The notes beneath the pieces are model-generated. The model saw nothing but the letters and a program-made list of their open reading frames with translations, was not told where the DNA came from and made no database searches. From IMG/VR virus record IMGVR_UViG_3300042308_001511, positions 62,001-126,000 of that record: a stretch of 64,000 bases of DNA; one strand, written 5' to 3'. Positions within the stretch are counted from its first letter, which is position 1; each line of letters begins with the position of its first letter. Both the position numbers and the translations under genes were made by a program. Below, one piece after another: positions 171 through 56,180 of the stretch.

Positions 171-221
171 CTAATTGTGTATTTGTTGTTGTTTATATTT
201 TTGACTTTAACTATGTTTATG

Positions 222-734
222 TTAGAAGTCACAGTCGTAGTAATCCAATATTCCACCATCACTCTTTACGAATATTAGTTCGTCGCGTCTTACAAGTTGA
301 TAATCATAATGCCTTCCTAATTTGAACAGCGTTCTTATGAAAGGTATTCCTTCACCTTCGTTAACTTGTTTTTCTTCTATCATTAGACAAAGTATTTTTC
401 TGTCTTCCTCAGGATTGTAATTAACTACTTCATCTTCATGATCTCTTTCGAGTCCTTTTTTACCATATGTTATGAATGTTGATTCAAGTCTTTCACCACT
501 AGGTGTATACTCTATCCATACGTTGTCACCTATTTTTATATTGACATCTTCATCCTTTAAATAAACCCTTGTCCAGAAGTATACTTTCTCAGGTGTTACT
601 TCTACCTGTATTTCACTTACATCGTCACTCAAATCGGTGGTATCTACATCCTGTAGTTGTTCTCTTACAAAGTCGTAAAGAGATATTGGATCTCCAGACC
701 CAATAATGTATTCCTTTTCAGTACTAGTTTCCAT
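222..734 (-). CDS. hypothetical protein (acidic)
   Basis: 170 aa ORF in a tight minus-strand operon. Confidence 0.7.
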   Translation of the reverse strand: METSTEKEYIIGSGDPISLYDFVREQLQDVDTTDLSDDVSEIQVEVTPEKVYFWTRVYLKDEDVNIKIGDNVWIEYTPSGERLESTFITYGKKGLERDHEDEVVNYNPEEDRKILCLMIEEKQVNEGEGIPFIRTLFKLGRHYDYQLVRRDELIFVKSDGGILDYYDCDF

Positions 735-1008
735 TTTTTTCGTTTGTTTTTTTATATTCTAACCAAGACTCCAAACTTTCGTAGTCTCTTGATTTACCCG
801 CATCAAATGCTGCATTCAATTCTTTATAATTGTATTTTGGTATCGTCTTTGGTATTTCATAATTGTGGTTTCCATTCGACACAAAAGCTTGAAATAGTTT
901 CATCTCCTCATTATATGGTCCATATTTTTCCTCGTTACGGTTGTTTATTTCGATTACGATTTGGTGTGAAGGATTGTTAGGGTCAAGACCCTCGTTCAAT
1001 TTGCTCAT
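724..1008 (-). CDS. hypothetical protein
   Basis: 94 aa ORF overlapping both neighbours. Confidence 0.65.
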   Translation of the reverse strand: MSKLNEGLDPNNPSHQIVIEINNRNEEKYGPYNEEMKLFQAFVSNGNHNYEIPKTIPKYNYKELNAAFDAGKSRDYESLESWLEYKKTNEKNGN

Positions 1009-1571
1009 ATTATCTCGTTTATTTTTTTGTTTCTTACATATGCCTTAGTCCACTCTTCAAGACTCAACACACCGAAGTCTGGATCCTCCACGTTGTGCTC
1101 ACTACGTACAGGTGATCTAGGCAGCAAAGTAGCATACCTATTTTCCTGGTGTCGTATGTATTTGTCATAGTTTATACAATAACCTTTGTCGGTATTGTTG
1201 TTTTTGTCAGTATCCAATAAAAACTCTAAAACAAATACATCACACGGAATACTCCTAATAAGACGTACATACTCTACAAACGGATAGTCATCTATCAGAT
1301 TGTGTATCATAAGACCTTCAACAAATACAAAAGTGTTAGGTTCCTTCTCTACGAGTTCACGGACTAATGTCAATCTTTTTGAGTCCTCAACTATGTCGGT
1401 TGAAAGAGTGAATTTCCACGTGAACTTCGAGTCAGGATATGGCATAACCTTCTGAACTTCTCTATGTGTGAGAAGAATAGATTGGTAGCCAGAGGTTTCA
1501 AGTCTCTTAGTCATCTCGATAAAAAAATAGGTCTGACTATTTGTGTCAAGCTTTATTAGTGTGTTCGGCAT
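1005..1571 (-). CDS. hypothetical protein with C-terminal RxxxIxxI motif
   Basis: 188 aa, ends YVRNKKINEII; AAAC-N18-TATAAT-N4-ATG upstream. Confidence 0.7.
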   Translation of the reverse strand: MPNTLIKLDTNSQTYFFIEMTKRLETSGYQSILLTHREVQKVMPYPDSKFTWKFTLSTDIVEDSKRLTLVRELVEKEPNTFVFVEGLMIHNLIDDYPFVEYVRLIRSIPCDVFVLEFLLDTDKNNNTDKGYCINYDKYIRHQENRYATLLPRSPVRSEHNVEDPDFGVLSLEEWTKAYVRNKKINEII

Positions 1572-1603
1572 GACTATTATAAAGAGTAATCAACGGTAAG
1601 TTT

Positions 1604-2389: not shown

Positions 2390-2433
2390 GAAATAATCTA
2401 TTAGATTATTTATATACTATAATTAGAATCTGT

Positions 2434-3069
2434 TTAGAACTTATAGTTTTTTGTAGGTTTTCTACACTTCACTTGACTTTTTATATTGTTTAGCTCGGTG
2501 TTTCCAATCTCTAACCTTGCATTTTTTCTTTTTAGTACCAACCCTTCAACCATATCTATTTTAGTTATTTCATCATACTTATCTTTGAATTTATTAAGGT
2601 ATGATTTAACCCGGTATACATTTTCTGATACTGAGTAAAGGTATTCGTGTTCTGATGAATTTACACCAAACATTTCGTCAAGTATGTTAGATCTTTGTTC
2701 AAACGTTTTTGTTATTAGGTAGTCACCATCATTTACGAGTATATCGAATATAACCAGTTTGTGATTGAATGTTTTTCCAGTTCCGTCTCTTTTTGATTTA
2801 TTCATATACTCTCCGTTTATTACGGTCCAACCACCAGTGCCTTTATACAATTTTAGTATTTCTTCACTAGGTATCTCGAATTTCGTAAGAGGTTGTGAGT
2901 GTCTATTCATAACCTTTATATTCTTACCATCTGTAAATATTAAACAATTTGAACCATCCAATTTAGGTTGTCCAAACATTGTGTTGTTATCATATGAGTT
3001 CAAATCCAAAGAAGGTATTGCATTCTTCGGTCTTGGAGGATAGATGTATCTATATACTGGATATTTCAT
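2434..3069 (-). CDS. minimal ATP-dependent ligase (nucleotidyltransferase domain only)
   Basis: Motif I QPKLDG, III NGEY, IIIa FDIL, IV EGLVLK, V VKCRK; no OB domain. Confidence 0.8.
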   Translation of the reverse strand: MKYPVYRYIYPPRPKNAIPSLDLNSYDNNTMFGQPKLDGSNCLIFTDGKNIKVMNRHSQPLTKFEIPSEEILKLYKGTGGWTVINGEYMNKSKRDGTGKTFNHKLVIFDILVNDGDYLITKTFEQRSNILDEMFGVNSSEHEYLYSVSENVYRVKSYLNKFKDKYDEITKIDMVEGLVLKRKNARLEIGNTELNNIKSQVKCRKPTKNYKF

Positions 3070-3102
3070 TTGTCTGTTTTTGACAAATGTAAGGAAATTT
3101 TC

Positions 3103-3903
3103 TTATAGATTTATATAAATATGTTTTTCTAAACGTTCTATCAACTCACCTTTTCCGATACTTTTTGGACCTGCTGTATTATTGTGTTCCCATTCTATCG
3201 AATCTATCGCCGATATTAATTTGGGTAAATCTATTTTAGATTTTATAAAATAATGTGATTGTTCTGATTTGTTATCGACTTCTAAGTAGTGTCTACCGGC
3301 ATAAAACCCAACTCTTCTGAATGCAAAGTCGGCTTCTGATTTATTTACAAATTCAAATAGATTGCTAGACTTTTTATAAACCTTTAATTCTCTAAGATAA
3401 TCTAATCTGTTCCATATTTGGAAAACACAAGGTACTTTATATACGTTTCCTTCCAATGTGAAAGAATCATCTGGAAGATCCATCTCGTATATTAAATGAT
3501 ACTCTAATGGTATTTTGTTTTTTATAGTGTCTTTTTTGAAAGACTTTGGAAGTATGAATGCTATAGTTTCTGCACCAATATCTGCAGCTTTTTTCAAAAA
3601 CTTAAGTGCCAGAGTTCCCTGATTACCGAAAGGTGGATTACCGACAACGAGTATTTTACCTGATAAATCCGAAGGATCAAATTCTAACCAATTTTGTTTT
3701 TTGACTCGTTTTGATTCTGGTGCAATATCAAATGATAATAGGTTTGTGTGATTTATCTTTTCTGTGAATGCACCACCTCCGGCAGATGGCTCTATAACGA
3801 CGTCAAAATTATTAAGTTCGATTTTAGAAAGAACATCTAATACGGTTTTTTCTTTTGTGTAGAATTTATCGTTCTCATTTCTTTTGTTACGGTTGTATGC
3901 CAT
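3103..3903 (-). CDS. N6-adenine/N4-cytosine DNA methyltransferase
   Basis: EPSAGGG SAM-binding motif and GNPPF catalytic motif. Confidence 0.85.
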   Translation of the reverse strand: MAYNRNKRNENDKFYTKEKTVLDVLSKIELNNFDVVIEPSAGGGAFTEKINHTNLLSFDIAPESKRVKKQNWLEFDPSDLSGKILVVGNPPFGNQGTLALKFLKKAADIGAETIAFILPKSFKKDTIKNKIPLEYHLIYEMDLPDDSFTLEGNVYKVPCVFQIWNRLDYLRELKVYKKSSNLFEFVNKSEADFAFRRVGFYAGRHYLEVDNKSEQSHYFIKSKIDLPKLISAIDSIEWEHNNTAGPKSIGKGELIERLEKHIYINL

Positions 3904-3965
3904 CTATATTATAGATATATATTCACCAATTTGTTTAGATAAAATAACAAACATTAAATTACTTT

Positions 3966-4159: not shown

Positions 4160-4351
4160 TCAGAAAGGTAAGTCGTTTTCGATAGGTTTGAAAATACCAC
4201 ATTTAGACTTCAAATGACAATCAATCTTATTGACCTCATCCATATACTGTTGTGCCTTCCAGTCGTCCATCATTCTCAATAAGTCAACCATTTGTTGATC
4301 ATCAATTGGTCTTTCTAATAAATCGTATGCTATGTTATCAATGTTTGTCAT
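4160..4351 (-). CDS. hypothetical protein
   Basis: 63 aa; TATATTCG box upstream. Confidence 0.5.
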   Translation of the reverse strand: MTNIDNIAYDLLERPIDDQQMVDLLRMMDDWKAQQYMDEVNKIDCHLKSKCGIFKPIENDLPF

Positions 4352-4407
4352 ATCTTTTTCTTTTTACGAATATACGGAACTTTGTATTTCTTTTTAATAT
4401 AAAGTGC

Positions 4408-5025
4408 ATGAGAATTGAGGATTTTTTTGTCGAGGTAAAATCTCCTATATCCTGCCATAGTGGTGGAGCAGAAGGAGCAGACACTGAGTTTGAACTCGGA
4501 TGTGTCAATATGGGAATACCTGTTTATGCATACTCCTGGAAGACGGAAAGACATAAATCACCCAACAAAGTAGAGATTTCATTAGATGATTTCAGAGAAG
4601 GATCTGAAAAAGTTAAGTCTGCTGCAAAAAGTATTGGAAGAAAAGGTGTAGAAAGACACATAAATCTTTTGGCACGTAACTGGGCACAGGTTAAATATTC
4701 TATGCAAGTCTTTGCAGTATCAACTATAGTTGCACCAGGGCATACTGAACCGAAAGGTCGAGTATCCACCGCTAAGAAAGAAATTGTTGCAGGTGGGACA
4801 GGATATGCTGTGGAGATGGCAATATTACACGAAAGAGAAGTATATGTGTTTGATCAGGTAAAGTGTGAATGGTTTGTGTGGTCTTATTCTTCTGAACGCT
4901 TCGTTCCATCTAAAGAACCATTAGTAACCAAACCATTTGCAGGAATTGGTTCTCGGCAGTTAACTCTGGAAGGAACCGAAGCCATAAAATCATTGTTAAA
5001 AAGGAGCTTCAGTTCTACTAAATAG
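4408..5025 (+). CDS. SLOG/DprA-like nucleotide-binding fold protein
   Basis: HSGGAEGAD and GGTGYAV motifs; start reassigned to ATG 4408 after TATAAA-N4. Confidence 0.6.
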   Translation: MRIEDFFVEVKSPISCHSGGAEGADTEFELGCVNMGIPVYAYSWKTERHKSPNKVEISLDDFREGSEKVKSAAKSIGRKGVERHINLLARNWAQVKYSMQVFAVSTIVAPGHTEPKGRVSTAKKEIVAGGTGYAVEMAILHEREVYVFDQVKCEWFVWSYSSERFVPSKEPLVTKPFAGIGSRQLTLEGTEAIKSLLKRSFSSTK

Positions 5026-5884: not shown

Positions 5885-7222
5885 ATGGTAAAAGTAGTAG
5901 AAATTGTAAAGATAACAAGACTGGTTCCGGTTTATAAGGACGGTCAAGAAGCGAACTCAATCTCGGTTGCTAAGTTCGAGTTTGCTGATGGAGGTGAATG
6001 TGGGTTCAATGTAATCGCACAGAAAGGTTTGTATGAGATTGGTTCTAAGGCCGTTTACATACAACCAGATTATTGTTTGTCTGATAATGAATTGTTTTCC
6101 AGTTTTATTGCACCTGGTGGTGAACCGAAAAAAAGTAGACTTGGAAAACAAAACAGAATACGTGCAATCAAATTTAACTTCCAATTTGAAGGAAGTAGTG
6201 ATCCAATTTATTCAAATGGTATTCTTATGCCACTTTCAGAAGTAGAAGATTTTCTAAATAATTCGGATCCTGAAAACTATTGTTTTTATAGTGATTTACC
6301 TTCACCGAATGCTTATTCTAAAATAGAAGATATAGAAGATTTGGCAGAGAAACTCGGTGTTACAAAATATGAAGAACCGGAAAGTGCGGGGTCAGGATTG
6401 GCTGCTGGTGAATTCCCTTCATTTATGTATAAAACGGATGAACCGAATGCGCTCAATTTAGTTTCACATATCAAACGTGTAATTGAGGAAGGACAAGAAC
6501 TTGGTATAACAATCAAAAGAGATGGTTCTTCACATACAACATACTTCAAATTAAAAGATGATGAGTGGAAAGTTGGTGTTTGTTCACGTTCTATGGAAAA
6601 GAAGATGGAACAATTACAAACAACTGGATACGTTTCATCAGAGGGTTTAGAGTATAGAAAACACTTTGATCGTGATACTATGACGAAAGGTTGGTTCTGT
6701 GAGACGAACGGTGAGTTTATTACTGATAATATCGCAGAGGAGACACTAACACCTATACAGAAAGAGGTGAAAGACTCCTGGGTAGAACTGGCTAAAAACT
6801 CAGGATTACTCGATAAAGGACTCGAATATTGTAAAGAGTATGGTGTTCAACTAGCATTCCGTGGAGAGATTATAGGACAGGGATTGAAAGGATCAGGAAA
6901 CAAAGTGAATCCAGATGCAAACGAAAAACAAAAACTCGTTCTTTTCGGAATTGATGATTTATCTGAGGGATATTCTAAGAGAATCAACTACTCTTCTCCA
7001 CACAATTTGAGATATGTTGCAAATCTTCTTGGTGTTGAATACACACAGGCACACATCGCGAAGTTTCCGACTTACGAGGCATTGTGTGAATATTGTGAAG
7101 GTATATTTGTGAAAGAGAAAGCAGAAGGAAGAATCATCGAAGGTGTCGTAATACGAACGATGTATACCAACGATTTATCTTGCAAATATATGAACGCGGA
7201 GTATGACAGTCTTAAGAAGTAG
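5885..7222 (+). CDS. RNA ligase, DRB0094/Rnl5-like family
   Basis: N-terminal OB-like domain, KRDGSS (motif I), VCSR, FRGEI, EGVVIR, CKYMNAEY. Confidence 0.85.
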   Translation: MVKVVEIVKITRLVPVYKDGQEANSISVAKFEFADGGECGFNVIAQKGLYEIGSKAVYIQPDYCLSDNELFSSFIAPGGEPKKSRLGKQNRIRAIKFNFQFEGSSDPIYSNGILMPLSEVEDFLNNSDPENYCFYSDLPSPNAYSKIEDIEDLAEKLGVTKYEEPESAGSGLAAGEFPSFMYKTDEPNALNLVSHIKRVIEEGQELGITIKRDGSSHTTYFKLKDDEWKVGVCSRSMEKKMEQLQTTGYVSSEGLEYRKHFDRDTMTKGWFCETNGEFITDNIAEETLTPIQKEVKDSWVELAKNSGLLDKGLEYCKEYGVQLAFRGEIIGQGLKGSGNKVNPDANEKQKLVLFGIDDLSEGYSKRINYSSPHNLRYVANLLGVEYTQAHIAKFPTYEALCEYCEGIFVKEKAEGRIIEGVVIRTMYTNDLSCKYMNAEYDSLKK

Positions 7223-11327: not shown

Positions 11328-11407
11328 AATAAAATGAACTTTTTTTTTGTATTAATTATACAGTTCGGTAATGGCTTTGTTGATTTAAATAGTTGTGAAT
11401 GTGGTTG

Positions 11408-15043: not shown

Positions 15044-15044
15044 A

Positions 15045-19930: not shown

Positions 19931-20172
19931 ACAATAAGCAAGATATAAAACAAGACTTCGTAAAAATGTGTGGTATGATATTCGTGAACTCTAAGGGTTC
20001 TTTATCATTTCCTTTCGAATCTATCGAACACGACCCAACTTATGATTACTTAGTAGAAGGTGAGAACTACTCTGTTTTGAAATCAAAAATGTCTAGCCTT
20101 ATCGAAATGATTAATAAAGATGCGTCTATCTTAGAGAAAGATATTGAAACAGAAATCTGGGATATTTTGTAG
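19927..20172 (+). CDS. hypothetical protein
   Basis: TATATTTG-N4-ATG. Confidence 0.6.
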   Translation: MNNKQDIKQDFVKMCGMIFVNSKGSLSFPFESIEHDPTYDYLVEGENYSVLKSKMSSLIEMINKDASILEKDIETEIWDIL

Positions 20173-20202
20173 AACATTTACTACATTCAAAGATAGAATA
20201 GT

Positions 20203-30528: not shown

Positions 30529-30567
30529 ATTTTTCGAAACTATACCTATGTGACAGGTATAATTCAT

Positions 30568-31433: not shown

Positions 31434-31798
31434 TGGAATGGATGAAAATAGATGGTGAAACTTATATGATAGAAGCCATAACAACGCAGTTTAGTGAGGA
31501 TCAACACAACATAAAATCTGTTGTGTTTGTAAAAGATTTAGTATCGGAACAGAAAATAATTGACTTATATGAGTCTGGTAATAGTTTTGAATTTGAGACT
31601 AATAAATGGAAATTTACTGGGTCACGAATAAAATCTATAACTTTCGACACATCAGGTGTCGTATTCGACATCGTCTCCAGGAATGGTGGTATGAAGTCAA
31701 TACAATATGAGAGGGATAAAAGAATAGATGAATTATTCGGATATGAAACTCCGGACGACATTAATGATATAAACACAGAACCAAAAAACCATAAATAG
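31430..31798 (+). CDS. hypothetical protein with RDxRIxxL motif
   Basis: YERDKRIDELFG near C-terminus. Confidence 0.65.
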   Translation: MMEWMKIDGETYMIEAITTQFSEDQHNIKSVVFVKDLVSEQKIIDLYESGNSFEFETNKWKFTGSRIKSITFDTSGVVFDIVSRNGGMKSIQYERDKRIDELFGYETPDDINDINTEPKNHK

Positions 31799-33925: not shown

Positions 33926-33955
33926 AAGGAGAGTTAAAAACTCTCCTTTTTTTTT
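33926..33955 (+). terminator. intrinsic terminator
   Basis: AAGGAGAGTT-aaa-AACTCTCC-T run. Confidence 0.8.
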
Positions 33956-33980
33956 CAATATAAAAAACAAAAACTTTTAT

Positions 33981-40785: not shown

Positions 40786-40871
40786 GTTCTTATAAGTTTT
40801 TTTTCGCTTCTTTTTATATTGGTTATCAATACCTTTGTTTAGATATATTTAGTATGTGTTTTCCTTTAAAC

Positions 40872-40898: not shown

Positions 40899-40912
40899 AA
40901 TATATTTCTGTT

Positions 40913-41896: not shown

Positions 41897-41978
41897 TTTG
41901 CTTTTTATTTTTTTAGTTATTCAGGCACCATTGCCTAATGATTATTATATTAGTTTTACTACTAAAAGTTTAGTTTGA

Positions 41979-42230: not shown

Positions 42231-42259
42231 ATAGTTTATATCGAATGTGTTTGGTAAGT

Positions 42260-42553
42260 TTATTTGTTTTGTTTATTATCTTCTCCTTTGAATGGACCTA
42301 ACATACCTTTCAGATTCCAAGATGATACGAATTTTTTGTTATGTTTCTCATAATCTTCATATGATTCGATGCCTGTATCGATTGGGTTTTGAATATATTG
42401 TATGTTAGCACCCTGCTTATTCATATCAGAAATTCTATTTCCAATATCGGTTTTTGCCGATTGTTTCATAACCCTTTTTAGTTTTTCTACTGAATTTTGA
42501 CGTGGTAGTGCCTCGTTCAACATATCAAACTCTTCAAATTTTAATATTCTCAT
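42260..42553 (-). CDS. putative head-internal virion protein
   Basis: TAATATATA-N4-ATG; starts MRILKFEEFDMLNEA. Confidence 0.7.
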   Translation of the reverse strand: MRILKFEEFDMLNEALPRQNSVEKLKRVMKQSAKTDIGNRISDMNKQGANIQYIQNPIDTGIESYEDYEKHNKKFVSSWNLKGMLGPFKGEDNKQNK

Positions 42554-42612
42554 AACCTATATATTAACTTAATCTTATATAAAACCATTACGTTATATAG
42601 AATATAACAGTC

Positions 42613-44565: not shown

Positions 44566-44577
44566 TTCGAAAAGGTA

Positions 44578-45252: not shown

Positions 45253-45956
45253 AACTCAGTGTTATAATACCGTGTTACAACTTCGAATCATATCTTGATA
45301 AGTGTATACAGAGTGTTCTCGAACAGGAAACAAATTTCTATTACGAAATAATAGTTGGTGATGACTGTTCTTCGGATTCATCAGCAACAATACTTTCGAA
45401 TTATATCGGTCGTATATCATACTATGTGAATCAAAATAACTTTGGTTATGGTGAAAATACGGTAAAGTTAATAAGTCTATGTAGAGGCGAATACATAACT
45501 TATCTCGATGGAGATGATTTCCTTACAGATAATCAAAAGTTCCAAAAACAGATTGACTTTTTAGACGCAAATCCAGAATATGTAATGCATAGTACTGGTT
45601 GTTTCTATGCAACACCAGAGGGAGAATTTTCTGGAACTATAATAACACCTGTGATTGAGGAGCCAACAACAGAAGAACTTTTATCGACTAATTACGTAGG
45701 ATTTGGAAGAACTTTCCGAAATATTAAAAATATTTCGTTTGAGTGGATGAAGGATATTAAGTTTCATGATTGGGCCATTAATTTCGAACTATCTTTGTTA
45801 GGAAAGATAAGGTGTGAGAATTTTGTATCTGGTGGATATAGGATATCCGGTAATGGCATAATAACTAGTCTCGATGATGGTGATATCTATAATCATAATC
45901 AAATTTGTATGGAAAAACTAGCTTACAGACTAAACGATTTTAAAAATAAGAATTGA
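45249..45956 (+). CDS. GT2 glycosyltransferase
   Basis: SVIIPCYN, GDDCSSD, LDGDD. Confidence 0.92.
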   Translation: MKLSVIIPCYNFESYLDKCIQSVLEQETNFYYEIIVGDDCSSDSSATILSNYIGRISYYVNQNNFGYGENTVKLISLCRGEYITYLDGDDFLTDNQKFQKQIDFLDANPEYVMHSTGCFYATPEGEFSGTIITPVIEEPTTEELLSTNYVGFGRTFRNIKNISFEWMKDIKFHDWAINFELSLLGKIRCENFVSGGYRISGNGIITSLDDGDIYNHNQICMEKLAYRLNDFKNKN

Positions 45957-45960
45957 TAAT

Positions 45961-48276
45961 ATGAATGTTCAAAAGATAATACAAGTAACTCCGGGTGTAA
46001 TGCAAATACCACCAACAGGATGGGGTGCGGTAGAAAAAATTATATGGGAGTATACTAAATCTCTTCGTTCGGTTGGATATGACGTGGAAATACTTTATAC
46101 AGATGATGTTTCTAATAGTGATAATCAAATTGTACATGTTCATATGGCAAATCTTGCGAATATTCTAAATGAAAGAGGAATTGAATATGTTTTTTCACTA
46201 CACGACCACCACGTAGAACATTTTGGTAAAGACTCTCAATGTTATAAAGATAACTATGATGCTATCAAAAATTCGAAAATTACATTCGTTCACTCACCAC
46301 ATCTTATTGAGTATTTCGATAATATGTCTAACATAGTTTATTTACAACATGGTGTGAACAACGAAGACTACATATTTTTAGATCGTTCGGAGATGGTTCG
46401 TAGGTCTCCTGGTATTGTTATGATGGCTAATAACGGACTCGGTGGTGATTCACTTTATGATAGGAAAGGATTTTTGATTGGAATTGATGCTGCCAATAGG
46501 TTACAACTTCCTATTACTATAATATGTCCAAGTAGTAACCGTGAATTCTTTGAATATCACAAAGTATCTTATGATAAACTTCAGATTATTTACGATTTGA
46601 ATTACGAAGATTCAATTAAAGAGCTTTCTAAACATACATTATTCTTAAATCCTTCGATTATAGAAGCAGGTCATCCTAACCTAACGGTTGTTGAGTCTTT
46701 ATCGTGTGGAATACCTGTTGTTGGTACATCTTATGTAGATGTCCCGGGACTTATTAGATGTAGTAGAGATTTAGAGGATGTAGTTTTGAAAATTGATGAG
46801 TGTCTATTTAAATATGATGGTTTGGTTGAATCTATAAAACAAACTAGAGAATCTTTGTCGTGGAATATTGTTGTCACTAAAATGTTACAATATTATAAAC
46901 GTGTTTATGAAATTTCGGAAAAATCACAATTAGAATGGCAATACAAAAACACAAAAATACTTAGACTACCTAAACAGGAAAAATCAGGAATTCAGGTTGA
47001 TTTCAAAAACGGAAGAACATTTGTTAAAACATCACTACACTCTCAGGGACTCAGTGCAGTTTTCCGTGACAACAAAACCAACTCTATAATATTTGAAACT
47101 ACCATAGGTAAAACTCCGGGTAATTGGGCGTATATGTATACACCGGTTGACCGATTTGTGGATTGGGAGGTTTCTGTTAACTTTGGAACAATTCCTTTAC
47201 ACGTAGAGCGTATGGATCTAAAAAGAAAGAAGGTTCTTGTCACTGGAAATCCTGACATATCATCTTTAGTTGAATTCAGTCTAAAAACTGGTGCATTTTT
47301 GACTCTAAGAGATTTTAAAAACGGATACTTCTGTTACGACCCTGATGCTAATTCGGATGATTTCTATACTGTATTTAATGAACAACAGATTAAAGACTAC
47401 TTCACAATTTGTCCTAGAGTAGTGGATAAGTTACTTCTAAAATCAGGATCTGCGGCACTGGGTGATACAATAGCATTTATACCATATGCACAGAAGTGGG
47501 CAGCCAGTAAAGGTATTGTTGCCGATGTAGATTGTGCTTGGTCTGATATATTTAAATCTACAGAGTATCCAAACCTTTGTTTCGTTGGAAGGGATGTTTC
47601 GATAGAGAACTATTCAAATATTTGGAGATTTGAATATCTATTTGATCGTCCATTACAGAAAGGATACTCGGATCAGTTCGGTTTAGAATATAAAGAGATT
47701 CCTGCAATGATAAGGAAATCAGGTAAAGATAATCCTGTTAATGAAAGATATGTTTGTCTGGGTGTTCAGACTACAACACAGTGTAAGTATTGGAATCGTG
47801 TTGGTGGATGGGATAAACTTTGTGAGATGTTGGAGTCTGAAGGTATAAAAGTTGTTTCGTTGGATAAATATGAAGTTTTTGGAATTGATGGTTATTGGAA
47901 TAGTCTTCCTGAAAAATCCGACAAAAAAGTAGGTATGGAATTCTCCGAGGTTATAAGATATATCGAACATTGTGATGCTTTCATAGGTGTTAGTAGTGGA
48001 TTGGGATGGTTAGCATATGGTCTCGATAAACAAGTGGTTATGATATCCGGAACAACTGTAAAAAATAATGAATTTACTATAAACAACCACCGTGTGTCAC
48101 CACCGGATAATGTTTGTAATGGTTGTTTCAACAAACCACACCTTTATAATTTTGATGCAGGAAACTGGTTATGGTGCCCGGTCTATTCCGGAACTGATAA
48201 AAGGTTTGAGTGTACAACTTCTATTTCACCAGAGATGGTATTCGAGGCGGTTATGGCGGCACTTGGTGAGTCTTAA
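45961..48276 (+). CDS. GT4-like domain fused to autotransporter-heptosyltransferase (TibC/Aah)-like domain
   Basis: IPP.GWGAVE, EAGHPNL; ALGDTIAFIP, KYWN..GW, FIGVSSGLGWLA, CNGC...CP...FECT four-Cys cluster. Confidence 0.8.
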   Translation: MNVQKIIQVTPGVMQIPPTGWGAVEKIIWEYTKSLRSVGYDVEILYTDDVSNSDNQIVHVHMANLANILNERGIEYVFSLHDHHVEHFGKDSQCYKDNYDAIKNSKITFVHSPHLIEYFDNMSNIVYLQHGVNNEDYIFLDRSEMVRRSPGIVMMANNGLGGDSLYDRKGFLIGIDAANRLQLPITIICPSSNREFFEYHKVSYDKLQIIYDLNYEDSIKELSKHTLFLNPSIIEAGHPNLTVVESLSCGIPVVGTSYVDVPGLIRCSRDLEDVVLKIDECLFKYDGLVESIKQTRESLSWNIVVTKMLQYYKRVYEISEKSQLEWQYKNTKILRLPKQEKSGIQVDFKNGRTFVKTSLHSQGLSAVFRDNKTNSIIFETTIGKTPGNWAYMYTPVDRFVDWEVSVNFGTIPLHVERMDLKRKKVLVTGNPDISSLVEFSLKTGAFLTLRDFKNGYFCYDPDANSDDFYTVFNEQQIKDYFTICPRVVDKLLLKSGSAALGDTIAFIPYAQKWAASKGIVADVDCAWSDIFKSTEYPNLCFVGRDVSIENYSNIWRFEYLFDRPLQKGYSDQFGLEYKEIPAMIRKSGKDNPVNERYVCLGVQTTTQCKYWNRVGGWDKLCEMLESEGIKVVSLDKYEVFGIDGYWNSLPEKSDKKVGMEFSEVIRYIEHCDAFIGVSSGLGWLAYGLDKQVVMISGTTVKNNEFTINNHRVSPPDNVCNGCFNKPHLYNFDAGNWLWCPVYSGTDKRFECTTSISPEMVFEAVMAALGES

Positions 48277-49324: not shown

Positions 49325-50530
49325 TTATTGTTTTGTCATTATATTTGGATCTATACCCTTCAATATCAACCTTGCATTCTCTAATCTGTAGGTCTCTTTG
49401 GCAAGTTTCTCCTTAACTATGCCATAAACATCTTTACCCTGTATCAACGCCATAACTGCAGAAAAGTTTTCACTCTTCCTGTATAATTGTGCGTACCTTT
49501 TTCTCATAAGACCTTCTCTCACAGAATTATCCCAATCAAAACCATCTGCCATAGTCTGATAAACTTCGTAGTCACTCATTATAGAATTTACTCTTCTATC
49601 AACCTCTTTAGTAACTGCGGCTATTATCTGCTCTACCCTTATGTGAGACTCTTTATCTTCCTCCGGTATCTGTGCCATAACATCATCTATTTGCTCATCT
49701 AATATGTAAGCTATTAGTCTGTTCTCACGGTAAAGATCGTCTGTTAGAAGTCCGTGTAGTGAAAAATACCAAGCGGTTTTCATCTTCACAAATAATCCAT
49801 CCAAATCCACTACCCATCCTTCCATATCTTCAACGGACTTACACATCTCTACAAGTTCATCAAGAGTATAATCATATTTCACGGCAGTTCTTATAGAACC
49901 TATTTTATCCTTATAGTCGTCCAAGTCTAAATACTCACCAGTTTTGTTGTTTCTAAGTCTAAGTAGTATTAGCTCTTCTTTGGCATACCTAAGTACTATT
50001 CTATTGCTTGGTGCAACATATTCAAATACTGCAACGAGGTCGTTATCAATAGACCAGTCAACAAATTTCTTTATTTCATAGTTATTGTTGTATATAGAAA
50101 GCATTCCTACCGCTTGGTCGGACTCGAATGACATTTTAGACTTAGCAAACACATTTCCGTTTGGTAGTCTTATGAAAGATCCAACAGAACCGTCCTCTTT
50201 AGAATATACAGATTTTACTTTTCTATCTTTTACTAAGGAATATTGTGTTTCTTCAACTTGGTTTAGATTGAAGAATTTGTGAAGTAGTCTGTATGTTTTG
50301 TAATTTCCGTCGTAATCGAAAACATAAACGAGACCTCGCATTTCCCATGCTAAGTTATCGTTGAAATCTTTGTATGATGCCAATCTATAATTGAATATAG
50401 ACACATTATACCCATCTACTATGAGTTTAGCCTCATAGAAAGCAGCATCGAGATACTGGTCTATTTCTGCCACGTATCTTTTGCCGATAGTCATAGCCAC
50501 AGCTTCTTCGTATGTTGGTATTTTATACAT
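49325..50530 (-). CDS. rnlA: T4 Rnl1-like RNA ligase
   Basis: EMRG, KFFNLNQ, KEDGS, FEY..P.NRIV, EGWV, VKMKT.WY..LH. Confidence 0.9.
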   Translation of the reverse strand: MYKIPTYEEAVAMTIGKRYVAEIDQYLDAAFYEAKLIVDGYNVSIFNYRLASYKDFNDNLAWEMRGLVYVFDYDGNYKTYRLLHKFFNLNQVEETQYSLVKDRKVKSVYSKEDGSVGSFIRLPNGNVFAKSKMSFESDQAVGMLSIYNNNYEIKKFVDWSIDNDLVAVFEYVAPSNRIVLRYAKEELILLRLRNNKTGEYLDLDDYKDKIGSIRTAVKYDYTLDELVEMCKSVEDMEGWVVDLDGLFVKMKTAWYFSLHGLLTDDLYRENRLIAYILDEQIDDVMAQIPEEDKESHIRVEQIIAAVTKEVDRRVNSIMSDYEVYQTMADGFDWDNSVREGLMRKRYAQLYRKSENFSAVMALIQGKDVYGIVKEKLAKETYRLENARLILKGIDPNIMTKQ

Positions 50531-50560
50531 AATGCAAATATAATAAATAATATATAAAGA

Positions 50561-51205
50561 ATGAAACATTTAGACACATTTCAACTTTTTAATGAGAAAA
50601 TGGTGCTTGATAATTATGATGAGTATGCCAAATTAGTAGCGGATGCCTACGAAGCAGCACCAGAATATGATGAAACAATGATATCATCATATAAATCTCT
50701 TATAAATCACGCAGTTAATAAACTATATCCACAAATAATTGGTATGGGTATTGATATACAATTTGTTGACTATGATCCATATAGTAGTAGAAATGATATG
50801 GCAGAAGATGTTGAAAAGAATAAGCTACTAAGAATAAGTTCATTATTCAACGAACATCCTGGTATTGATAAAAAGATATTTACCAAAGAAGATAATTTGA
50901 AATTTAGAGCTGTACACGATTGGTATACACATATAATATGTAATCAAGATTTTGGTCTAAAAGGAGAACTAAAGGCATATAATACACACGCCACATTGGC
51001 ACCACCCGATGCACTTCCTGCACTATTTACCGAAGTAGTCGGACAAGCTTGTTATGCAATTGATAGAGGTAGTGTTGGTGAAAATGGTGATTTTATACCT
51101 GGATTCGGTGGGCAAAAGTTTGCCAGATTGAATGGATTTGATTATGGAAATGTTGGTATTGTTTCTGGATATGATATTTCGGGTAAAAAACTTTTCAAAA
51201 AATAA
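50561..51205 (+). CDS. putative head-internal virion protein with HDxxxH motif
   Basis: TAATATATA-N4-ATG; starts MKHLDTFQLFNE; FRAVHDWYTH...GE..AY..H...TEVVGQ. Confidence 0.65.
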   Translation: MKHLDTFQLFNEKMVLDNYDEYAKLVADAYEAAPEYDETMISSYKSLINHAVNKLYPQIIGMGIDIQFVDYDPYSSRNDMAEDVEKNKLLRISSLFNEHPGIDKKIFTKEDNLKFRAVHDWYTHIICNQDFGLKGELKAYNTHATLAPPDALPALFTEVVGQACYAIDRGSVGENGDFIPGFGGQKFARLNGFDYGNVGIVSGYDISGKKLFKK

Positions 51206-51630: not shown

Positions 51631-52101
51631 ATGGAAAGAGTATTCAGACTTATGTCGACACATACTAATGTGGAAACCCAAATTGGTATAAATAATATTA
51701 CAAAGTCAGAATTTGACTTTATGCAGGATTTATTAAGTAATGATTATTGTATTGACTTAAAATATGATGGAATTAAGTACAATCCGGAAGGACATATTGA
51801 AGTATTGTTGACTCGTTTTGATGATGATGAGTTAGAGAAGTTTTTAGATATTGATAAAAAACTACACGTAAATTCTTTGGGTTACACAAAAGTAGAAGAC
51901 ATAACCAAAGAAGTTTTATACACAATGCACGATACGAGTGTATACGGTATTTTCGAACAGGATGTATTGGAAATGTTCTATAACTATAAATCGGACTACG
52001 TGACGAAAGATGACATACTTGAAAAAATATTAGAATACGGTATTTCATCTATAACAGAGAATGATAAAAACATATTACACGATTTACCATTAGAATTATA
52101 A
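51631..52101 (+). CDS. hypothetical protein
   Basis: Start probably MERVF; C-terminal DDILEKI..GISSIT..DK.IL helix pair. Confidence 0.6.
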   Translation: MERVFRLMSTHTNVETQIGINNITKSEFDFMQDLLSNDYCIDLKYDGIKYNPEGHIEVLLTRFDDDELEKFLDIDKKLHVNSLGYTKVEDITKEVLYTMHDTSVYGIFEQDVLEMFYNYKSDYVTKDDILEKILEYGISSITENDKNILHDLPLEL

Positions 52102-52105: not shown

Positions 52106-52279
52106 ATGAATAAGTTTAGACTACCTAGAAAGACAAAAAAGAAACTTAGGGGTTTCTATCTACTTCCTCCTGATAAAAATGGAAACAGACAATGGTGTAA
52201 TCCTAAGGCATCACAGGAAGAATATAACGATGTTAAGTCCGGAAAGGCAGAAGATATGATGAAGACATGGGTGAAATAA
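52106..52279 (+). CDS. small basic protein (not in ORF track)
   Basis: MNKFRLPRKTKKKLRGFYLLPPDKNGNRQWCNPKASQEEYNDVKSGKAEDMMKTWVK. Confidence 0.55.
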   Translation: MNKFRLPRKTKKKLRGFYLLPPDKNGNRQWCNPKASQEEYNDVKSGKAEDMMKTWVK

Positions 52280-53209: not shown

Positions 53210-53504
53210 ACTTCTTATCAATTTCAATTTGAATCTTATTCAACTCCTCTACGACTTCCTGTTCAACATCGGAATCTATATCATTTAGTATCTGATGTGC
53301 TCGGTGGTTTGCACGAACCATTATCTCAGTGAAATCGAGAACGTTTTGTTTATCTATTTCCATAACCAAGTCTTCTTCTAATATAGACTCACGGAAATAG
53401 AAGGCAATCTTTATTATTTCCGCGAGTTTGGTGGTCTGAGTGTCTGTTTGTTCGATACGCCACTTCATTTTGTTTATGATTGGTTGTAAATAGTTATCTT
53501 TCAT
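53169..53504 (-). CDS. hypothetical protein
   Basis: Start probably MKDNYLQ. Confidence 0.55.
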   Translation of the reverse strand: MKDNYLQPIINKMKWRIEQTDTQTTKLAEIIKIAFYFRESILEEDLVMEIDKQNVLDFTEIMVRANHRAHQILNDIDSDVEQEVVEELNKIQIEIDKKYGYTGKNGTQQED

Positions 53505-53547
53505 ATTTTTTTTATAAACATAATTAAAAAAAGACTGTAAAACAAGC

Positions 53548-54156
53548 ATGAGATTCGAAGATTTTAATACAAATCCAAACTGGGATGAATCCATACTTAT
53601 GAATTATAGATGTTTCTATGATGAAATATGGAATGGTGGTGAATATGAGAGATATGATGTAGGTATAATGCCTGGTGATGTCGTTGTGGATTGTGGTGCT
53701 AGTATCGGTATATTTACCAGATATGCTCTTAGTAGAGGAGCCAGTCGTGTTATTTCTATAGAAGCTGATACTGATGTACATAAATATTTAGTAATAAATA
53801 CAGAAGGTCAAAATGTACTTTCGTTAAATGGAACGGTTGGTGGAGATTGGGATATTGAATCTATTATGAATACGGCGGGAATAGAAAATATTGATTTTTT
53901 GAAAATTGATATAGAGGGTTGGGAGTTTGACCTTCTTTCTAAAATAAGTGAAGACACACTTTCCAAAGTACGTAAAATATCGATGGAGGTTCACTTATGG
54001 GGAGTTTTTGAATACATATCAGAAGTACAGACTGCTGCAAATTCGTGTTTAAGACTCACTTCATTATTAGAAAGACTTACGAAGGCCGGATTCCGAATTT
54101 CTTTTGAAAGAGCACACACGAACACGTGTCTCTATATGTTATACGCAAAGCGTTAG
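53548..54156 (+). CDS. FkbM-family methyltransferase
   Basis: VVDCGASIG, FLKIDIEGWE, MEVH. Confidence 0.85.
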   Translation: MRFEDFNTNPNWDESILMNYRCFYDEIWNGGEYERYDVGIMPGDVVVDCGASIGIFTRYALSRGASRVISIEADTDVHKYLVINTEGQNVLSLNGTVGGDWDIESIMNTAGIENIDFLKIDIEGWEFDLLSKISEDTLSKVRKISMEVHLWGVFEYISEVQTAANSCLRLTSLLERLTKAGFRISFERAHTNTCLYMLYAKR

Positions 54157-56096
54157 ATACGAAAGTCGTTGAATCCTGAGATCCAGGACTCGTTCTTCTT
54201 CTTTCCCTTCTTCTTTCCCTTCTTCTTCACTGGCTCCTCTCTCTTCTCGTAAGGATTGACCTCACCATCAGGGCCCAAAGATTCTTCAGTCACATCTACT
54301 ATATTCTCGTCGAACGCACTAGCTATGCCTTCCGCCTTCTCTGTGTCAATAGTACCGACGTATGCCGTCGATCCGGAATAATAAGAAGATGGTGCCGACA
54401 CGTATACCGGAATTTCCGTTTGATCGAAATACTCGTAGTCGAATATTTTCTGTAATAACCCACTCTCACTATCCTCATGTATAAAGAGTAACATGTGTAC
54501 GTCATCTAACTTGCTTACGTAAGCCCTATCATCTTCGTTTTGATCTTCTACTCCGAAGAAGAAAGTCTCGTCTAATTCGACGTTCCACTTCTTCATACTT
54601 TCAAGCTTGTTCCTGAAGAAGTAAGTACCTGCTATCTCCTTCAGGAAAGGAATGACCTCCGGTCTACGATTTATAATCTCGAAAATAACTTTTTGATTAG
54701 GATCCTCGTGCATGTACTTTCTGATTTCCCAGTAGAACACAAGTGCTGACTTACCAAGTTTGTTCTTCTCTGCCGCAACGACCGACCAGAATAGTTCCTC
54801 GTCGAGTTGCTGTTCGGACATAACACACTGCATATAAGTCGCCCTGATACCAGGATATTCCCTCACTTTAGATATGTATTTACCTGCCGCTTTCAGTACC
54901 TTTTCATAACCTTCTTTTCCCCGAAGCGTGTCAAGAATATTCTCTATGTGTTTTACCTGATCTTCGAATTCTTCTTCCAGACCTTCCTTTCGGATTAACC
55001 TCTCTATACCTGCAACCGTTTCTACCTTTCCAACCAACTGGTTAGGATCCATCCTGTAATACGTTTCATCAGAATCCGCATATAACACAGGGTTCAGTGT
55101 GAACCTTCCATATTTGGCACCGTTCACCTCGTCTAACCAAGCATCTACCGTCGATTTGAAAACAGAAACCTTCTTACCGTACATTTCCGTATCGGAAACT
55201 AGCACGAAGTCGTCTTTGTCAACCTCTTTGTCATCCTCTACCTCTCTTATGTAAGGCTTTATGTTCAGAACCGAAACAGGGTTCTTTATATCTAAGTCGT
55301 CTTTCCTCACCAGGTAAGAAACCAAAGATCCTTCCTTCACATCATAAAGTAAATATTTTGCATTCACACCGGTCTCTGTTCTATCATCAATATCACTTTC
55401 GAGTGATCTTATTCTATCATTTATATTAGTTTCCTTTTCCTGTAACTCACTGAGTTTTTTTTCCTTATCAATGTTAGGAACAAATCTATTAATCTTATCC
55501 TTACTTAGTTTTATTTCGTCTATCTCTTGTTCTAAGGTCTGCCATTCTTGTTTGACTTTTCTTAGTTCTCTTCTGAGTTTTTCTACCTCGTCCTGTTTTT
55601 TGGTTACTCTCTCAGAAGTACCGTGTGCCATAGTCATACAGTTCGTCCAGTCTCTATCGGTATCAGCACCTGCGATATCATATGGGTGTCTTGATATTAC
55701 AACCATTAGTTGTTCTTTCGATCCAGCTTTCCTGTTTTCATCCTCTACAAAGGATTTCATAAGTCTTTTTGCTTCGTTGTCTTTGGCACCTAATTTGGTG
55801 AGCACCTGACCAATCTTAGATGTATTTTTGGCATCTTTGAATTTACAAATACCTTTCACATAATCAATAACCTCGTAACCTGCATTGATTAAATAATCGG
55901 TTACTTCTTTCTCAGTACCGGTATTATTAACGAGTGTTTCACCCTTCAATGGTAGATAAATTCGATAATGGTTCTTATCACCATTATATTTTTTGAATAT
56001 TTCTACATACCTTTCTTTATTGAAAGCTTGTACAAATCTACGGAATTGTGAAGGTTTGAGTGCCTCTGTAAAAGTTTTGAAATTTATTATTTTCAT
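54153..56096 (-). CDS. large putative head-internal virion protein
   Basis: TATATA-N5-ATG; starts MKIINFKTFTEA; central coiled coil; ends KKNESWISGFNDFRI. Confidence 0.7.
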   Translation of the reverse strand: MKIINFKTFTEALKPSQFRRFVQAFNKERYVEIFKKYNGDKNHYRIYLPLKGETLVNNTGTEKEVTDYLINAGYEVIDYVKGICKFKDAKNTSKIGQVLTKLGAKDNEAKRLMKSFVEDENRKAGSKEQLMVVISRHPYDIAGADTDRDWTNCMTMAHGTSERVTKKQDEVEKLRRELRKVKQEWQTLEQEIDEIKLSKDKINRFVPNIDKEKKLSELQEKETNINDRIRSLESDIDDRTETGVNAKYLLYDVKEGSLVSYLVRKDDLDIKNPVSVLNIKPYIREVEDDKEVDKDDFVLVSDTEMYGKKVSVFKSTVDAWLDEVNGAKYGRFTLNPVLYADSDETYYRMDPNQLVGKVETVAGIERLIRKEGLEEEFEDQVKHIENILDTLRGKEGYEKVLKAAGKYISKVREYPGIRATYMQCVMSEQQLDEELFWSVVAAEKNKLGKSALVFYWEIRKYMHEDPNQKVIFEIINRRPEVIPFLKEIAGTYFFRNKLESMKKWNVELDETFFFGVEDQNEDDRAYVSKLDDVHMLLFIHEDSESGLLQKIFDYEYFDQTEIPVYVSAPSSYYSGSTAYVGTIDTEKAEGIASAFDENIVDVTEESLGPDGEVNPYEKREEPVKKKGKKKGKKKNESWISGFNDFRI

Positions 56097-56180
56097 AGTA
56101 CTATATATAAAAACGTTTGACCTGATAAAAAACATTTTCTCTATGTAAAACTATAATAGGACGACAAAAAATATTTTGCA

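What the first reader, a model, noticed from the sequence alone, without database searches (positions are those of the whole stretch)
190..56157. Bipartite AAAC-N17/18-TATAA(T) motif before replication, repair and chaperone operons: probable phage-sigma middle promoter
Seen in sequence: [ACG]AAC followed 17-19 nt later by TATAA[TAC] or TAGAAT, upstream of the edge gene (about 190-220), 1571, nei (about 2410-2435), the MTase at 3903, 4408, uvsX (about 11355-11382), the C5 MTase at 20203, 30568, the GT operon at 33981, 40785, SSB (about 41944-41972), 42230, 42613 and the grpE-dnaJ operon (56130-56157). It differs from both the host-type box and the late box. AAC at -35 recalls ECF-type sigma recognition. 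Inference: a three-tier transcription programme that needs a phage-encoded sigma factor located outside this window.
Basis: partly seen in the sequence, partly recalled or inferred. Interest (0 to 1): 0.6.

Follow-up and report, generated by a model that had tools for sequence, protein, structure and literature searches.

The report
Phage ECF-sigma promoter class (AAAC-N17/18-TATAA)
A huge freshwater phage marks its DNA-replication, repair, DNA-modification and chaperone genes with a two-part promoter (AAAC, 17-18 bases, TATAA) that is most likely read by the phage's own ECF-type sigma factor, a known kind of phage gene switch in a family where it had not been described.

Summary
An unbiased dyad search on all 233 upstream regions of the 344-kb phage genome ranks AAAC-N18-TATA first. 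Sites just upstream of genes spike only at spacings 17, 18 and weakly 19 (19, 16 and 8, against about 2 elsewhere).

The motif is conserved upstream of gp32 in 52 of 53 related phages. A 597-kb relative shows the same genome-wide spike.

The predicted sigma factor exists outside the window. It is a 203-aa ECF-type sigma (regions 2 and 4.2, nearest solved structure B. subtilis SigW). Its own gene carries the motif here and in 19 of 20 relatives, the usual autoregulation signature of ECF sigmas.

Two other promoter classes exist: a Bacteroidota-host box (TAtATTTG) and a single-element box (tAATATATA). They are discrete from this class.

Genes behind the motif are replication, repair, methylase, glycosyltransferase and chaperone genes, with no recognisable virion gene.

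Not shown: that this sigma reads the motif, or that the class is temporally "middle". No transcript 5' ends or time course are available. The ATATATA ("late") box also precedes ribonucleotide reductase and topoisomerase genes and swaps with this motif between relatives.

Verdict: a new member of a known kind.

The parts
192..218 (-). M promoter AAAC-N17-TATAAA, 21 nt before the ATG of the edge gene. That gene is the N-terminal part of a family-B DNA polymerase (genome 60644-62170).
1576..1603 (-). M promoter AAAC-N18-TATAAT, with the hexamer 4 nt before ATG 1571 (leaderless layout). The gene 1005-1571 has no family hit.
2409..2435 (-). M promoter AAAC-N17-TATAAA, 19 nt before the ATG of the Fpg/Nei glycosylase gene (1604-2389).
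3908..3936 (-). M-like site AAAC-N19-TATAAT, hexamer 4 nt before ATG 3903. The gene 3103-3903 gives a weak, sub-cut-off methyltransferase-like match. The N19 spacing makes this site less certain.
4377..4403 (+). M promoter GGAACttt-N-TATAAA (GAAC, N17), hexamer 4 nt before ATG 4408. ATG 4408 is probably the true start of ORF 4252-5025.
11355..11382 (-). Weak variant CAAC-N18-TATAAT, 27 nt before the uvsX/RecA-like gene (10101-11327). In relatives this gene mostly uses the ATATATA box instead.
20172..20199 (+). Weakest variant GAAC-N18-TAGAAT, 3 nt before the ATG of the C5 cytosine methylase gene (20203-21105).
30537..30563 (+). M promoter AAAC-N17-TATAAT, hexamer 4 nt before ATG 30568. ATG 30568 is probably the true start of ORF 30550-31152.
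31746..31773 (+). It lies 28 nt before the ClpA/ClpC-like double-AAA+ chaperone gene (31802-33922). The orthologue in relative G014 also has an M site.
33938..33964 (+). M promoter AAAC-N17-TATAAA, 16 nt before ATG 33981. The AAAC lies in the descending arm of the preceding terminator-like hairpin. The three downstream genes have no family hits.
40813..40840 (-). M promoter AAAC-N18-TATAAA, 27 nt before ATG 40785 (gene 39823-40785, unknown function). The orthologue in G014 also has an M site.
41944..41971 (-). M promoter AAACtttt-N-TATAAT (AAAC, N18) of the gp32 single-strand-binding protein gene (40913-41896). It is conserved in 52 of 53 relatives.
41897..41943 (-). gp32 5' leader. A hairpin begins at the 6th nt after the -10 hexamer. 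The same position, with different stem sequences, is seen in most relatives.
42235..42261 (-). M promoter AAAC-N17-TATAAA, hexamer 4 nt before ATG 42230 (83-aa gene).
42582..42608 (+). M promoter AAAC-N17-TATAAC, hexamer 4 nt before ATG 42613. It heads the glycosyltransferase/methyltransferase cluster 42613-48276.
52068..52096 (+). Possible site AAAC-N19-TAGAAT, 9 nt before the small ORF 52106-52279. Weak.
56130..56157 (+). M promoter AAAC-N18-TATAAT before the operon that holds GrpE (56678-57217); DnaJ (58659-59705) lies further downstream. The first-gene orthologue in G014 also has an M site.

Best explanation
The motif is a promoter class of a huge (at least 344 kb) freshwater phage that infects a Bacteroidota host. 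I propose that the phage's own ECF-type sigma factor reads it. That gene is at genome 14784-15395, 203 aa, about 47 kb left of the window.

Proposed mechanism (inferred):
- The sigma binds the host RNA polymerase core.
- Its region 4.2 contacts the -35 element AAAC(ttt).
- Its region 2 contacts the -10 element TATAA(A/T/C), 17-18 bp downstream.
- Transcription starts about 5 nt after the hexamer.

That start position gives either leaderless mRNAs (hexamer, 4 nt, ATG) or leaders of 16-28 nt. The sigma gene is a single-gene unit with its own copy of the promoter and a terminator, so it should amplify its own expression.

The regulon covers DNA replication, recombination and repair (DnaB-like and XPD-like helicases, PolB, gp32, UvsX, Nei, RNase H-like, PD-(D/E)XK nuclease). 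It also covers DNA methylases, glycosyltransferases and chaperones (the GrpE operon, ClpA/C-like, OmpH-like). This content suggests a delayed-early or middle class.

Shown: the motif, its spacing, its position before genes, its conservation, the sigma gene and its type, and the motif before the sigma gene. Inferred: that this sigma reads it, the start site, and the timing.
For: Motif:
- Spacing-specific enrichment before genes.
- Top-ranked dyad in a blind search.
- 15 window matches against 3.5 in shuffles.

Sigma:
- It is the only sigma-like gene found in the genome, with Sigma70_r2 plus r4_2.
- It passes the TIGR02937 sigma70-ECF cut-off, and its best (sub-cut-off) match is SigW.
- The nearest solved structure is B. 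subtilis SigW, E 4e-17. From my own knowledge, SigW's -35 element is TGAAAC.
- The recognition helix of region 4.2 (LSTIKSQIRNGR) is nearly invariant across 42 family members, matching the invariant -35.

Autoregulation signature:
- AAAC-N18-TATAAA lies 89 nt before the sigma ATG.
- The same element lies 46-124 nt upstream in 19 of 20 relatives of 55-72% identity, with unconserved flanks.
- A terminator follows the gene.

Family-wide conservation:
- gp32 carries the motif in 52 of 53 relatives.
- G014 (597 kb, sigma 52% identical) shows a spike at N18 only: 33 upstream sites against about 4.
- All 6 near-complete relatives hold a sigma match.
- Regulon membership is shared with G014 (Fisher P 0.008 to 0.0003).

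A discrete class:
- Among hexamers placed 4 nt before an ATG, TATATA never has AAC at -35 (30 to 0).
- TATAA[ATC] nearly always does (8 to 2).

Start-site geometry: the leaderless spacing agrees with a gp32 leader hairpin that starts at the 6th nt after the hexamer.

Precedent: phage sigmas with region 4 read bipartite promoters (phage 7-11 gp47). Those without region 4 read single elements (phiEco32 gp36) (PMC8948821).

Gene content.
Against: - There is no direct evidence of transcription starts or of sigma dependence. The metatranscriptome contigs cover gp32 but are 150-350 nt long and show no 5' end.
- The -10 element TATAA is unlike the CGT-type -10 usual for ECF sigmas (my own knowledge).
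- No anti-sigma gene lies next to the sigma gene. Its downstream neighbour is a ClpP-like protease gene.
- The sigma promoters of relatives also contain an ATATATA box in the spacer (about 12 of 20), and some have a host-type TATCTTTG box upstream (about 6 of 20). The motif before the sigma gene is therefore not the only candidate driver.
- uvsX and topoisomerase II swap between this motif and the ATATATA box among relatives, which blurs any strict temporal separation.
- Some relatives carry a second, divergent ECF-like sigma.
Confidence: 0.65

Rival explanations
1. Sigma appropriation. The host primary sigma still reads the -10 element, and a phage DNA-binding activator bound at AAAC(ttt) replaces -35 recognition, as with T4 MotA/AsiA at middle promoters. 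The ECF-like sigma would serve another class.
For: The phage has T4-like replication genes (gp32, UvsX, PolB). The -35 word sits where a MotA box would. The ATATATA class has no assigned factor.
Against: No MotA or AsiA homologue was found. The host-type -7 box in this genome is TAtATTTG, and the TATAA hexamers lack TTTG, so host sigma-A is a poor fit. The spacing of 17-18 bp and the AAC core are those of sigma region 4 / -35 promoters. The motif sits before the sigma gene in 20 of 21 genomes.
Confidence: 0.1
2. The motif mimics the promoters of a host ECF (stress) sigma. The phage plugs its replication genes into a host regulon, and the phage sigma is a captured copy that merely boosts it.
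For: The phage sigma is a typical cellular-type ECF sigma. The AAC -35 element is general to ECF sigmas (my own knowledge).
Against: At least 1599 clusters at 90% identity are homologous to this sigma; the 120 closest listed share 72% identity or more, and several lie on very long contigs (up to 687 kb). One scan of 185,579 species genomes found only two weak hits. So the close family looks phage-borne rather than host-borne. TATAA at -10 is not a usual cellular ECF -10 element.
Confidence: 0.1
3. One phage sigma, two architectures. The same ECF-like sigma reads both the bipartite motif and the single-element tAATATATA box, where the extended -10 replaces the -35. The programme would then have two tiers, not three.
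For: Only one sigma gene is detectable. Both hexamers sit exactly 4 nt before leaderless ATGs. Orthologous genes swap between the two classes. Both classes precede replication-type genes.
Against: The two classes are sharply discrete, with no intermediates: TATATA with AAC occurs 0 times in 30, and TATAA[ATC] without AAC occurs 2 times in 10. The genome record is about 91% complete, and gp55-like minimal sigmas are hard to detect. Group-2 jumbo phages are reported to carry both a minimal and a complete sigma (PMC7824862).
Confidence: 0.12
4. Chance. In a 63% A+T genome, AAAC and TATAA co-occur often, and the reader picked favourable cases.
For: The loose pattern has about 17 chance matches per 64 kb, extrapolated from the off-spacing counts. 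The TATAA-type hexamers occur 2019 times in the genome.
Against: The spike is restricted to N17/18 and to gene-upstream positions. It is the top dyad in a blind search. None of 100 shuffles reaches the observed count. It is replicated in two other genomes and at orthologous positions in 52 of 53 relatives.
Confidence: 0.01

Closest known systems
Salmonella phage 7-11 gp47 sigma and its bipartite late promoters (GTAAtg-N16-aCTA)
   Same: A phage-encoded divergent sigma with region 4 directs the host core to a bipartite promoter unlike the host's (PMC8948821).
   Different: The sequence, spacing and gene class differ: late structural genes there, replication and repair genes here. The hosts differ (Enterobacteria against Bacteroidota). 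No self-promoter was found before gene 47 there, whereas the motif is conserved before the sigma gene here.
Bacillus subtilis SigW and other group-4 (ECF) sigmas
   Same: Same two-domain architecture (sigma-2 plus sigma-4). SigW is the best sequence match. Shared features are a -35 element with an AAAC/AAC core followed by T's, spacing of about 16-18, and an autoregulated gene.
   Different: The -10 element is TATAA, not CGTA. There is no adjacent anti-sigma gene. The protein scores far below the SigW equivalog cut-off (90.9 against 209 bits). It is phage-borne and its targets are phage genes.
Bacillus phage SPO1 gp28 middle-gene sigma, and the T4 MotA/AsiA middle promoters
   Same: A phage-specified change of promoter specificity that turns on replication-type genes after host-type early promoters.
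   Different: gp28 reads another motif. T4 uses an activator plus a remodelled host sigma rather than a new sigma. No MotA or AsiA is present here.
phiEco32 gp36 (tAATGTAtA) and T4 gp55 (TATAAATA) single-element promoters
   Same: These resemble the second phage class seen here (tAATATATA[ACG], no -35 element), not the motif under review.
   Different: The reviewed motif needs a -35 element. No gp55-like protein was detected here.
Bacteroidota primary-sigma promoters (-33 TTTG / -7 TAnnTTTG)
   Same: Present in this genome as a separate class of about 40 sites, TAtATTTGta, mostly before small genes.
   Different: The reviewed motif has neither TTTG element.

Membership tests
ECF (group 4) sigma-70 family: the proposed reader of the motif | Only regions 2 and 4, small size (about 200 aa) | tested here: met
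   203 aa. Pfam Sigma70_r2 spans residues 26-98 and Sigma70_r4_2 spans 144-186, with no r1 or r3.
ECF (group 4) sigma-70 family: the proposed reader of the motif | Passes a curated ECF model | tested here: met
   TIGR02937 sigma70-ECF scores 75.7 bits against a cut-off of 42.9. No equivalog cut-off is reached (SigW 90.9 against 209).
ECF (group 4) sigma-70 family: the proposed reader of the motif | Own gene preceded by its target promoter (autoregulation) | tested here: met
   The motif lies before the sigma gene here and in 19 of 20 relatives. This is sequence evidence only.
ECF (group 4) sigma-70 family: the proposed reader of the motif | Co-transcribed anti-sigma factor | tested here: not met
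   A terminator follows the gene, then a ClpP-like protease gene. This feature is common among ECF sigmas but not universal.
ECF-type promoter | -35 element with an AAC core, spacer about 16-18 bp | tested here: met
   [A>G,C]AAC, often followed by ttt, with spacing 17/18.
ECF-type promoter | -10 element of the CGT type | tested here: not met
   The -10 element is TATAA[A/T/C].
Phage 'middle' temporal class | Transcripts appear after early genes and before late genes, and depend on an early phage product | not testable with these tools
   The phage is uncultured. Only short metatranscriptome contigs are available.
T4 MotA-dependent middle promoters | MotA box at -30 plus MotA and AsiA genes | tested here: not met
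   No MotA_activ or AsiA match at E<=10. The motif differs.
T4-type late promoters (gp55) | Single -10 element without a -35 element; gp55 sigma present | tested here: not met
   The motif is bipartite. phrog_234 and phrog_12791 are absent.
Bacteroidota sigma-A promoters | TAnnTTTG at -7 and TTTG at -33 | tested here: not met
   These form a separate class. The hexamers of the reviewed motif lack TTTG.

The most novel reading that the evidence does not exclude
An autoregulated ECF-type sigma carried by a very large family of freshwater huge phages gives Bacteroidota RNA polymerase an E. coli-like -10 element (TATAAT) together with an AAAC -35 element. This would be an orthogonal sigma/promoter pair for a phylum whose own promoters are unusual. 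It would drive many leaderless mRNAs. It would work beside a second, far more numerous promoter class (tAATATATA) whose specificity factor is not recognisable by sequence and may be a new kind of factor.
Probability: 0.3. Interest if true: 0.65.

Novelty: new member of a known kind. Interest (0 to 1): 0.5.

Why it matters
Transcription programmes of huge uncultured phages are almost unknown, and those of Bacteroidota phages especially so. This work gives three things that can be tested at the bench:
- a concrete promoter consensus;
- a named candidate sigma gene;
- a partly conserved regulon, across a phage family found in lakes and rivers of at least 12 studies.

It also provides three sequence-defined promoter classes that can be used to annotate operons and true start codons in these genomes. 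About a tenth of the genes appear leaderless. If the pair works as proposed, it is a compact orthogonal expression switch for Bacteroidota.

Tried and rejected
- RNA evidence. Four freshwater metatranscriptome runs were laid on 39001-45000. Only 150-350-nt contigs were found, mostly on gp32, with no 5' ends, so this is inconclusive.
- Virion genes for defining the late class. Pfam Gp23, Terminase_6C and Phage_sheath_1 gave nothing usable. PHROG scans of large proteins found a virion/tail-spike protein and a tape-measure-like protein, and Pfam found collagen-repeat and lectin-type fibre proteins; no capsid or terminase was found.
- A second sigma or activator. gp55 families, MotA, AsiA, and the divergent sigma of relatives G021/G002 were all absent from this genome.
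- G002 as a counter-example. It shows the motif spike but has no type-1 sigma. I rejected it because its contig begins inside the region homologous to our 21-37 kb, and nothing matches our first 21 kb. The sigma region is simply not on the contig.
- RNAalifold on the gp32 leaders failed because MAFFT misaligned the hairpins. I replaced it with single-sequence folds.
- A scan of species genomes for the sigma gave one 25-residue match in a Chitinophagaceae MAG and one distant hit. This is only a faint hint about the host.
- Sigma-70-type consensus scanning near the sigma gene gave no more hits than shuffles.

Full report
**Context.** The window is bases 62001-126000 of a single 344,083-bp virus record, 36.6% G+C, estimated about 91% complete. 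The same DNA occurs in lake and river metagenomes from 12 studies.

My own crude gene call gives 448 genes. Start codons have no Shine-Dalgarno sequence (30 of 446) but an A-rich stretch at -7 to -17. About 40 upstream regions carry TAtATTTGta, which is the -7 box of Bacteroidota primary-sigma promoters. One protein has a type-IX-secretion sorting domain. The host is therefore very probably a Bacteroidota. A 25-residue match in a Chitinophagaceae MAG is only a faint further hint.

- All 14 sites exist at the stated places.
- In a scan of spacings 8-30, the count of [ACG]AAC-Nx-(TATAA[TAC]|TAGAAT) sites ending no more than 40 nt before a start is 19, 16 and 8 at x = 17, 18 and 19. It is about 2 at every other spacing. 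TTGA-, GTTT- and TTTG-type upstream words show no such spike.
- A blind enumeration of all 4-mer/4-mer dyads at spacings 12-23 in the 233 upstream regions ranks AAAC-N18-TATA first (29 against 5.2, P about 5e-13). Shifted versions of the same dyad come next.
- In the window the strict pattern occurs 15 times against 3.5 +/- 1.9 in shuffles.
- The loose pattern is not specific on its own: 30 window matches, with about half expected by chance. The CAAC/GAAC/TAGAAT/N19 variants (uvsX, 20203, 3903) are enriched as a group but are individually uncertain.
- The sites at 4408 and 30568 show that the true starts of those genes are the ATGs 4 nt after the hexamer.

**Three discrete promoter classes.** Besides the host-type box (H), the most enriched upstream words form a single-element box t-A-ATATATA-[ACG] (A). 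It has 82 sites within 40 nt of starts and no -35 signal.

Both A and the reviewed motif (M) have a bimodal distance to the ATG: either the hexamer lies exactly 4 nt before the ATG, or 16-28 nt before it.

Taking every TATANN hexamer placed 4 nt before an ATG:
- TATATA never has AAC at -35 (30 to 0);
- TATAA[ATC] nearly always does (8 to 2).

The same holds in a relative.

**The sigma factor.** Searching the whole genome with Sigma70_r2, r4_2 and r4 gives one gene, at 14784-15395 on the plus strand, outside the window.

It encodes 203 aa with regions 2 and 4.2 only. It passes the curated ECF superfamily model and matches SigW best, without reaching any equivalog cut-off. B. subtilis SigW is also the nearest solved structure. 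At least 1599 clusters at 90% identity are homologous; the 120 closest share 72% identity or more, and several lie on very long contigs (up to 687 kb).

The gene is preceded by AAAC-N18-TATAAA, 89 nt before its ATG, and followed by an intrinsic terminator. In 19 of 20 related phage contigs (55-72% identity) the same [AC]AACtttt...TATAA[AT] lies 46-124 nt upstream, while the flanks are not conserved. A 597-kb relative has it with TATAAG.

A conserved target-type promoter before its own gene is the standard signature of ECF autoregulation. The region 4.2 recognition helix is almost invariant in 42 family members, which fits the invariant -35 word.

**Conservation of the motif.**
- Upstream of gp32, 52 of 53 related loci (43-87% identity) carry AAACttt-N17/18-TATAA[ATC], and the 53rd has TATAAG.
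- In the loci fetched from relatives, the pattern is also about twice as frequent at N17/18 as at other spacings away from the anchor genes.
- The 597-kb relative G014 (sigma 52% identical) shows a genome-wide spike at N18 only: 65 sites, 33 before genes, against about 4. It also has the A and H classes.
- G002 shows the spike at N17/18.
- All six near-complete relatives have a sigma match.
- G002, the apparent exception, has only a divergent sigma. Its contig lacks the whole region homologous to our first 21 kb, so it is not informative.
- Of 92 orthologue pairs with G014, 7-9 are M-driven in both genomes: DnaB-like helicase, PolB, gp32, the S1-domain protein, the first gene of the GrpE operon, the ClpA/C-like chaperone and others (Fisher P 0.008 to 0.0003).

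**What the class controls.** Genes directly behind M sites are:
- DnaB-like helicase, XPD-like helicase and PolB (N-terminal part);
- Fpg/Nei, UvsX, gp32, RNase H-like and a PD-(D/E)XK nuclease;
- three C5 methylases, one N6/N4 methylase and one weak methyltransferase-like match;
- several glycosyl- or sugar-transferases;
- a guanylate-kinase-like protein and an S1-domain protein;
- the GrpE operon (DnaJ lies further downstream), a ClpA/C-like AAA+ protein and an OmpH-like protein;
- the sigma gene itself.

None is a recognisable virion protein.

A sites precede a virion/tail-spike protein, a 2709-aa collagen-repeat fibre and a tape-measure-like protein. They also precede the ribonucleotide reductase large subunit, both topoisomerase II subunits, tRNA nucleotidyltransferase and homing-endonuclease-like genes.

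H sites precede mostly small genes: median 145 aa, against 237 for M and 220 for A.

This fits an order of H, then M, with A as a broad later or general class, but it does not prove it. uvsX uses the A box in 36 of 43 relatives, and topoisomerase II is M-driven in G014. So genes move between the two classes.

**Start-site geometry.** The leaderless layout (hexamer, 4 nt, ATG) predicts a start at the 5th nt after the hexamer. Independently, most of 40 distinct gp32 leaders fold into a hairpin whose first paired base is the 6th nt after the hexamer. The stem sequences differ widely and the mean z-score is -4.2. This is what a 5'-terminal stabilising stem-loop would look like. It is indirect support for these being real promoters with that start.

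**Rivals.** A MotA/AsiA-type mechanism finds no homologues, and the hexamer does not look like the host -7 box. Mimicry of a host ECF regulon cannot be excluded, but the sigma family looks phage-borne. One sigma reading both M and A is possible, because only one sigma is detectable. However, the classes have no intermediates. Published work on phiEco32 and phage 7-11 links single-element promoters to sigmas without region 4 and bipartite ones to sigmas with region 4 (PMC8948821). Group-2 jumbo phages are reported to carry a minimal and a complete sigma (PMC7824862). Chance is excluded.

**Limits.** No transcript 5' ends, no time course and no biochemical test are available. The RNA runs that hold this phage are kept only as short contigs. 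The sigma promoters of relatives also hold an A box in the spacer (about 12 of 20) and sometimes an H-like TATCTTTG box upstream (about 6 of 20). How sigma expression is first switched on remains open. My gene calls are heuristic.

**Verdict.** It is a new member of a known kind of system: phage-encoded sigma plus cognate promoters. Its unusual features are the TATAA -10 element for an ECF-type sigma, the frequent leaderless layout and the Bacteroidota host. The 'middle' label and the strict three-tier scheme remain hypotheses.

Noticed in passing
window 41897-41943 (-), and L044-L098: The gp32 leader carries a hairpin that starts at the 6th nt after the -10 hexamer in most of 40 distinct relatives. 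The stem sequences are quite different (compensatory changes), and an A-rich tract follows up to the ATG. It looks like a 5'-terminal stabiliser or an autoregulatory operator, as in T4 gene 32.
   Followed up: partly
whole genome; in the window e.g. ATG 1571, 3903, 4408, 15677, 20203, 28218, 28704, 30568, 42230, 42553, 42613, 50561: About 50 genes (roughly a tenth) have a TATANN hexamer exactly 4 nt before the ATG, in all three promoter classes. This implies leaderless mRNAs. The relative G014 has 87 such genes.
   Followed up: partly
whole genome; window sites before 15677(-), 18906(-), 19424(+), 23028(+), 28218(-), 28704(+), 42553(-), 50561(+): The single-element box tAATATATA[ACG] is the most abundant promoter-like motif: 82 sites here and 197 in G014. 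It often follows a terminator. No gp55-like or other factor for it could be found.
   Followed up: partly
genome 13600-14500 (outside the window; L001 240-1170): A GC-rich insert just upstream of the sigma gene holds two open frames. Their codon usage differs so much from the rest of the genome that my gene caller skipped them. It is probably a recent acquisition.
   Followed up: no
L157 (G002) 1417-2028 and L158 (G021) 1405-2016: Some relatives carry a second 203-aa ECF-like sigma, only 21-27% identical to the main one and with a different region 4.2 helix. It is absent from this genome.
   Followed up: partly
L024-L043, 5' leaders of the sigma gene: Repeated ACGGCA-like words (e.g. aacggcaattaacggc) lie between the promoter and the ATG of the sigma gene in many relatives. 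A similar '(c)ggcaattATG' context occurs before gp32. This may be a translational control site.
   Followed up: no
window 31802-33922, 56678-57217, 58659-59705; genome 206054-206566 and 15462-16028: The phage carries its own protein-folding and turnover set: ClpA/C-like AAA+, GrpE, DnaJ, an OmpH-like protein and a ClpP-like protease. No DnaK was recognised; the 660-aa gene 54153-56135 has no family hit.
   Followed up: partly
window 2434-3069, 5885-7222, 49325-50569; genome 11417-13426: Several ligases are present: an ATP-dependent DNA-ligase-like protein, two RNA-ligase-like proteins including a T4 Rnl1-type, and an NAD-dependent DNA ligase.
   Followed up: no
The real sugar-transferase cluster is 42613-48276 (GT1/FkbM, epimerase-like, GT2, GT9).
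   Followed up: yes
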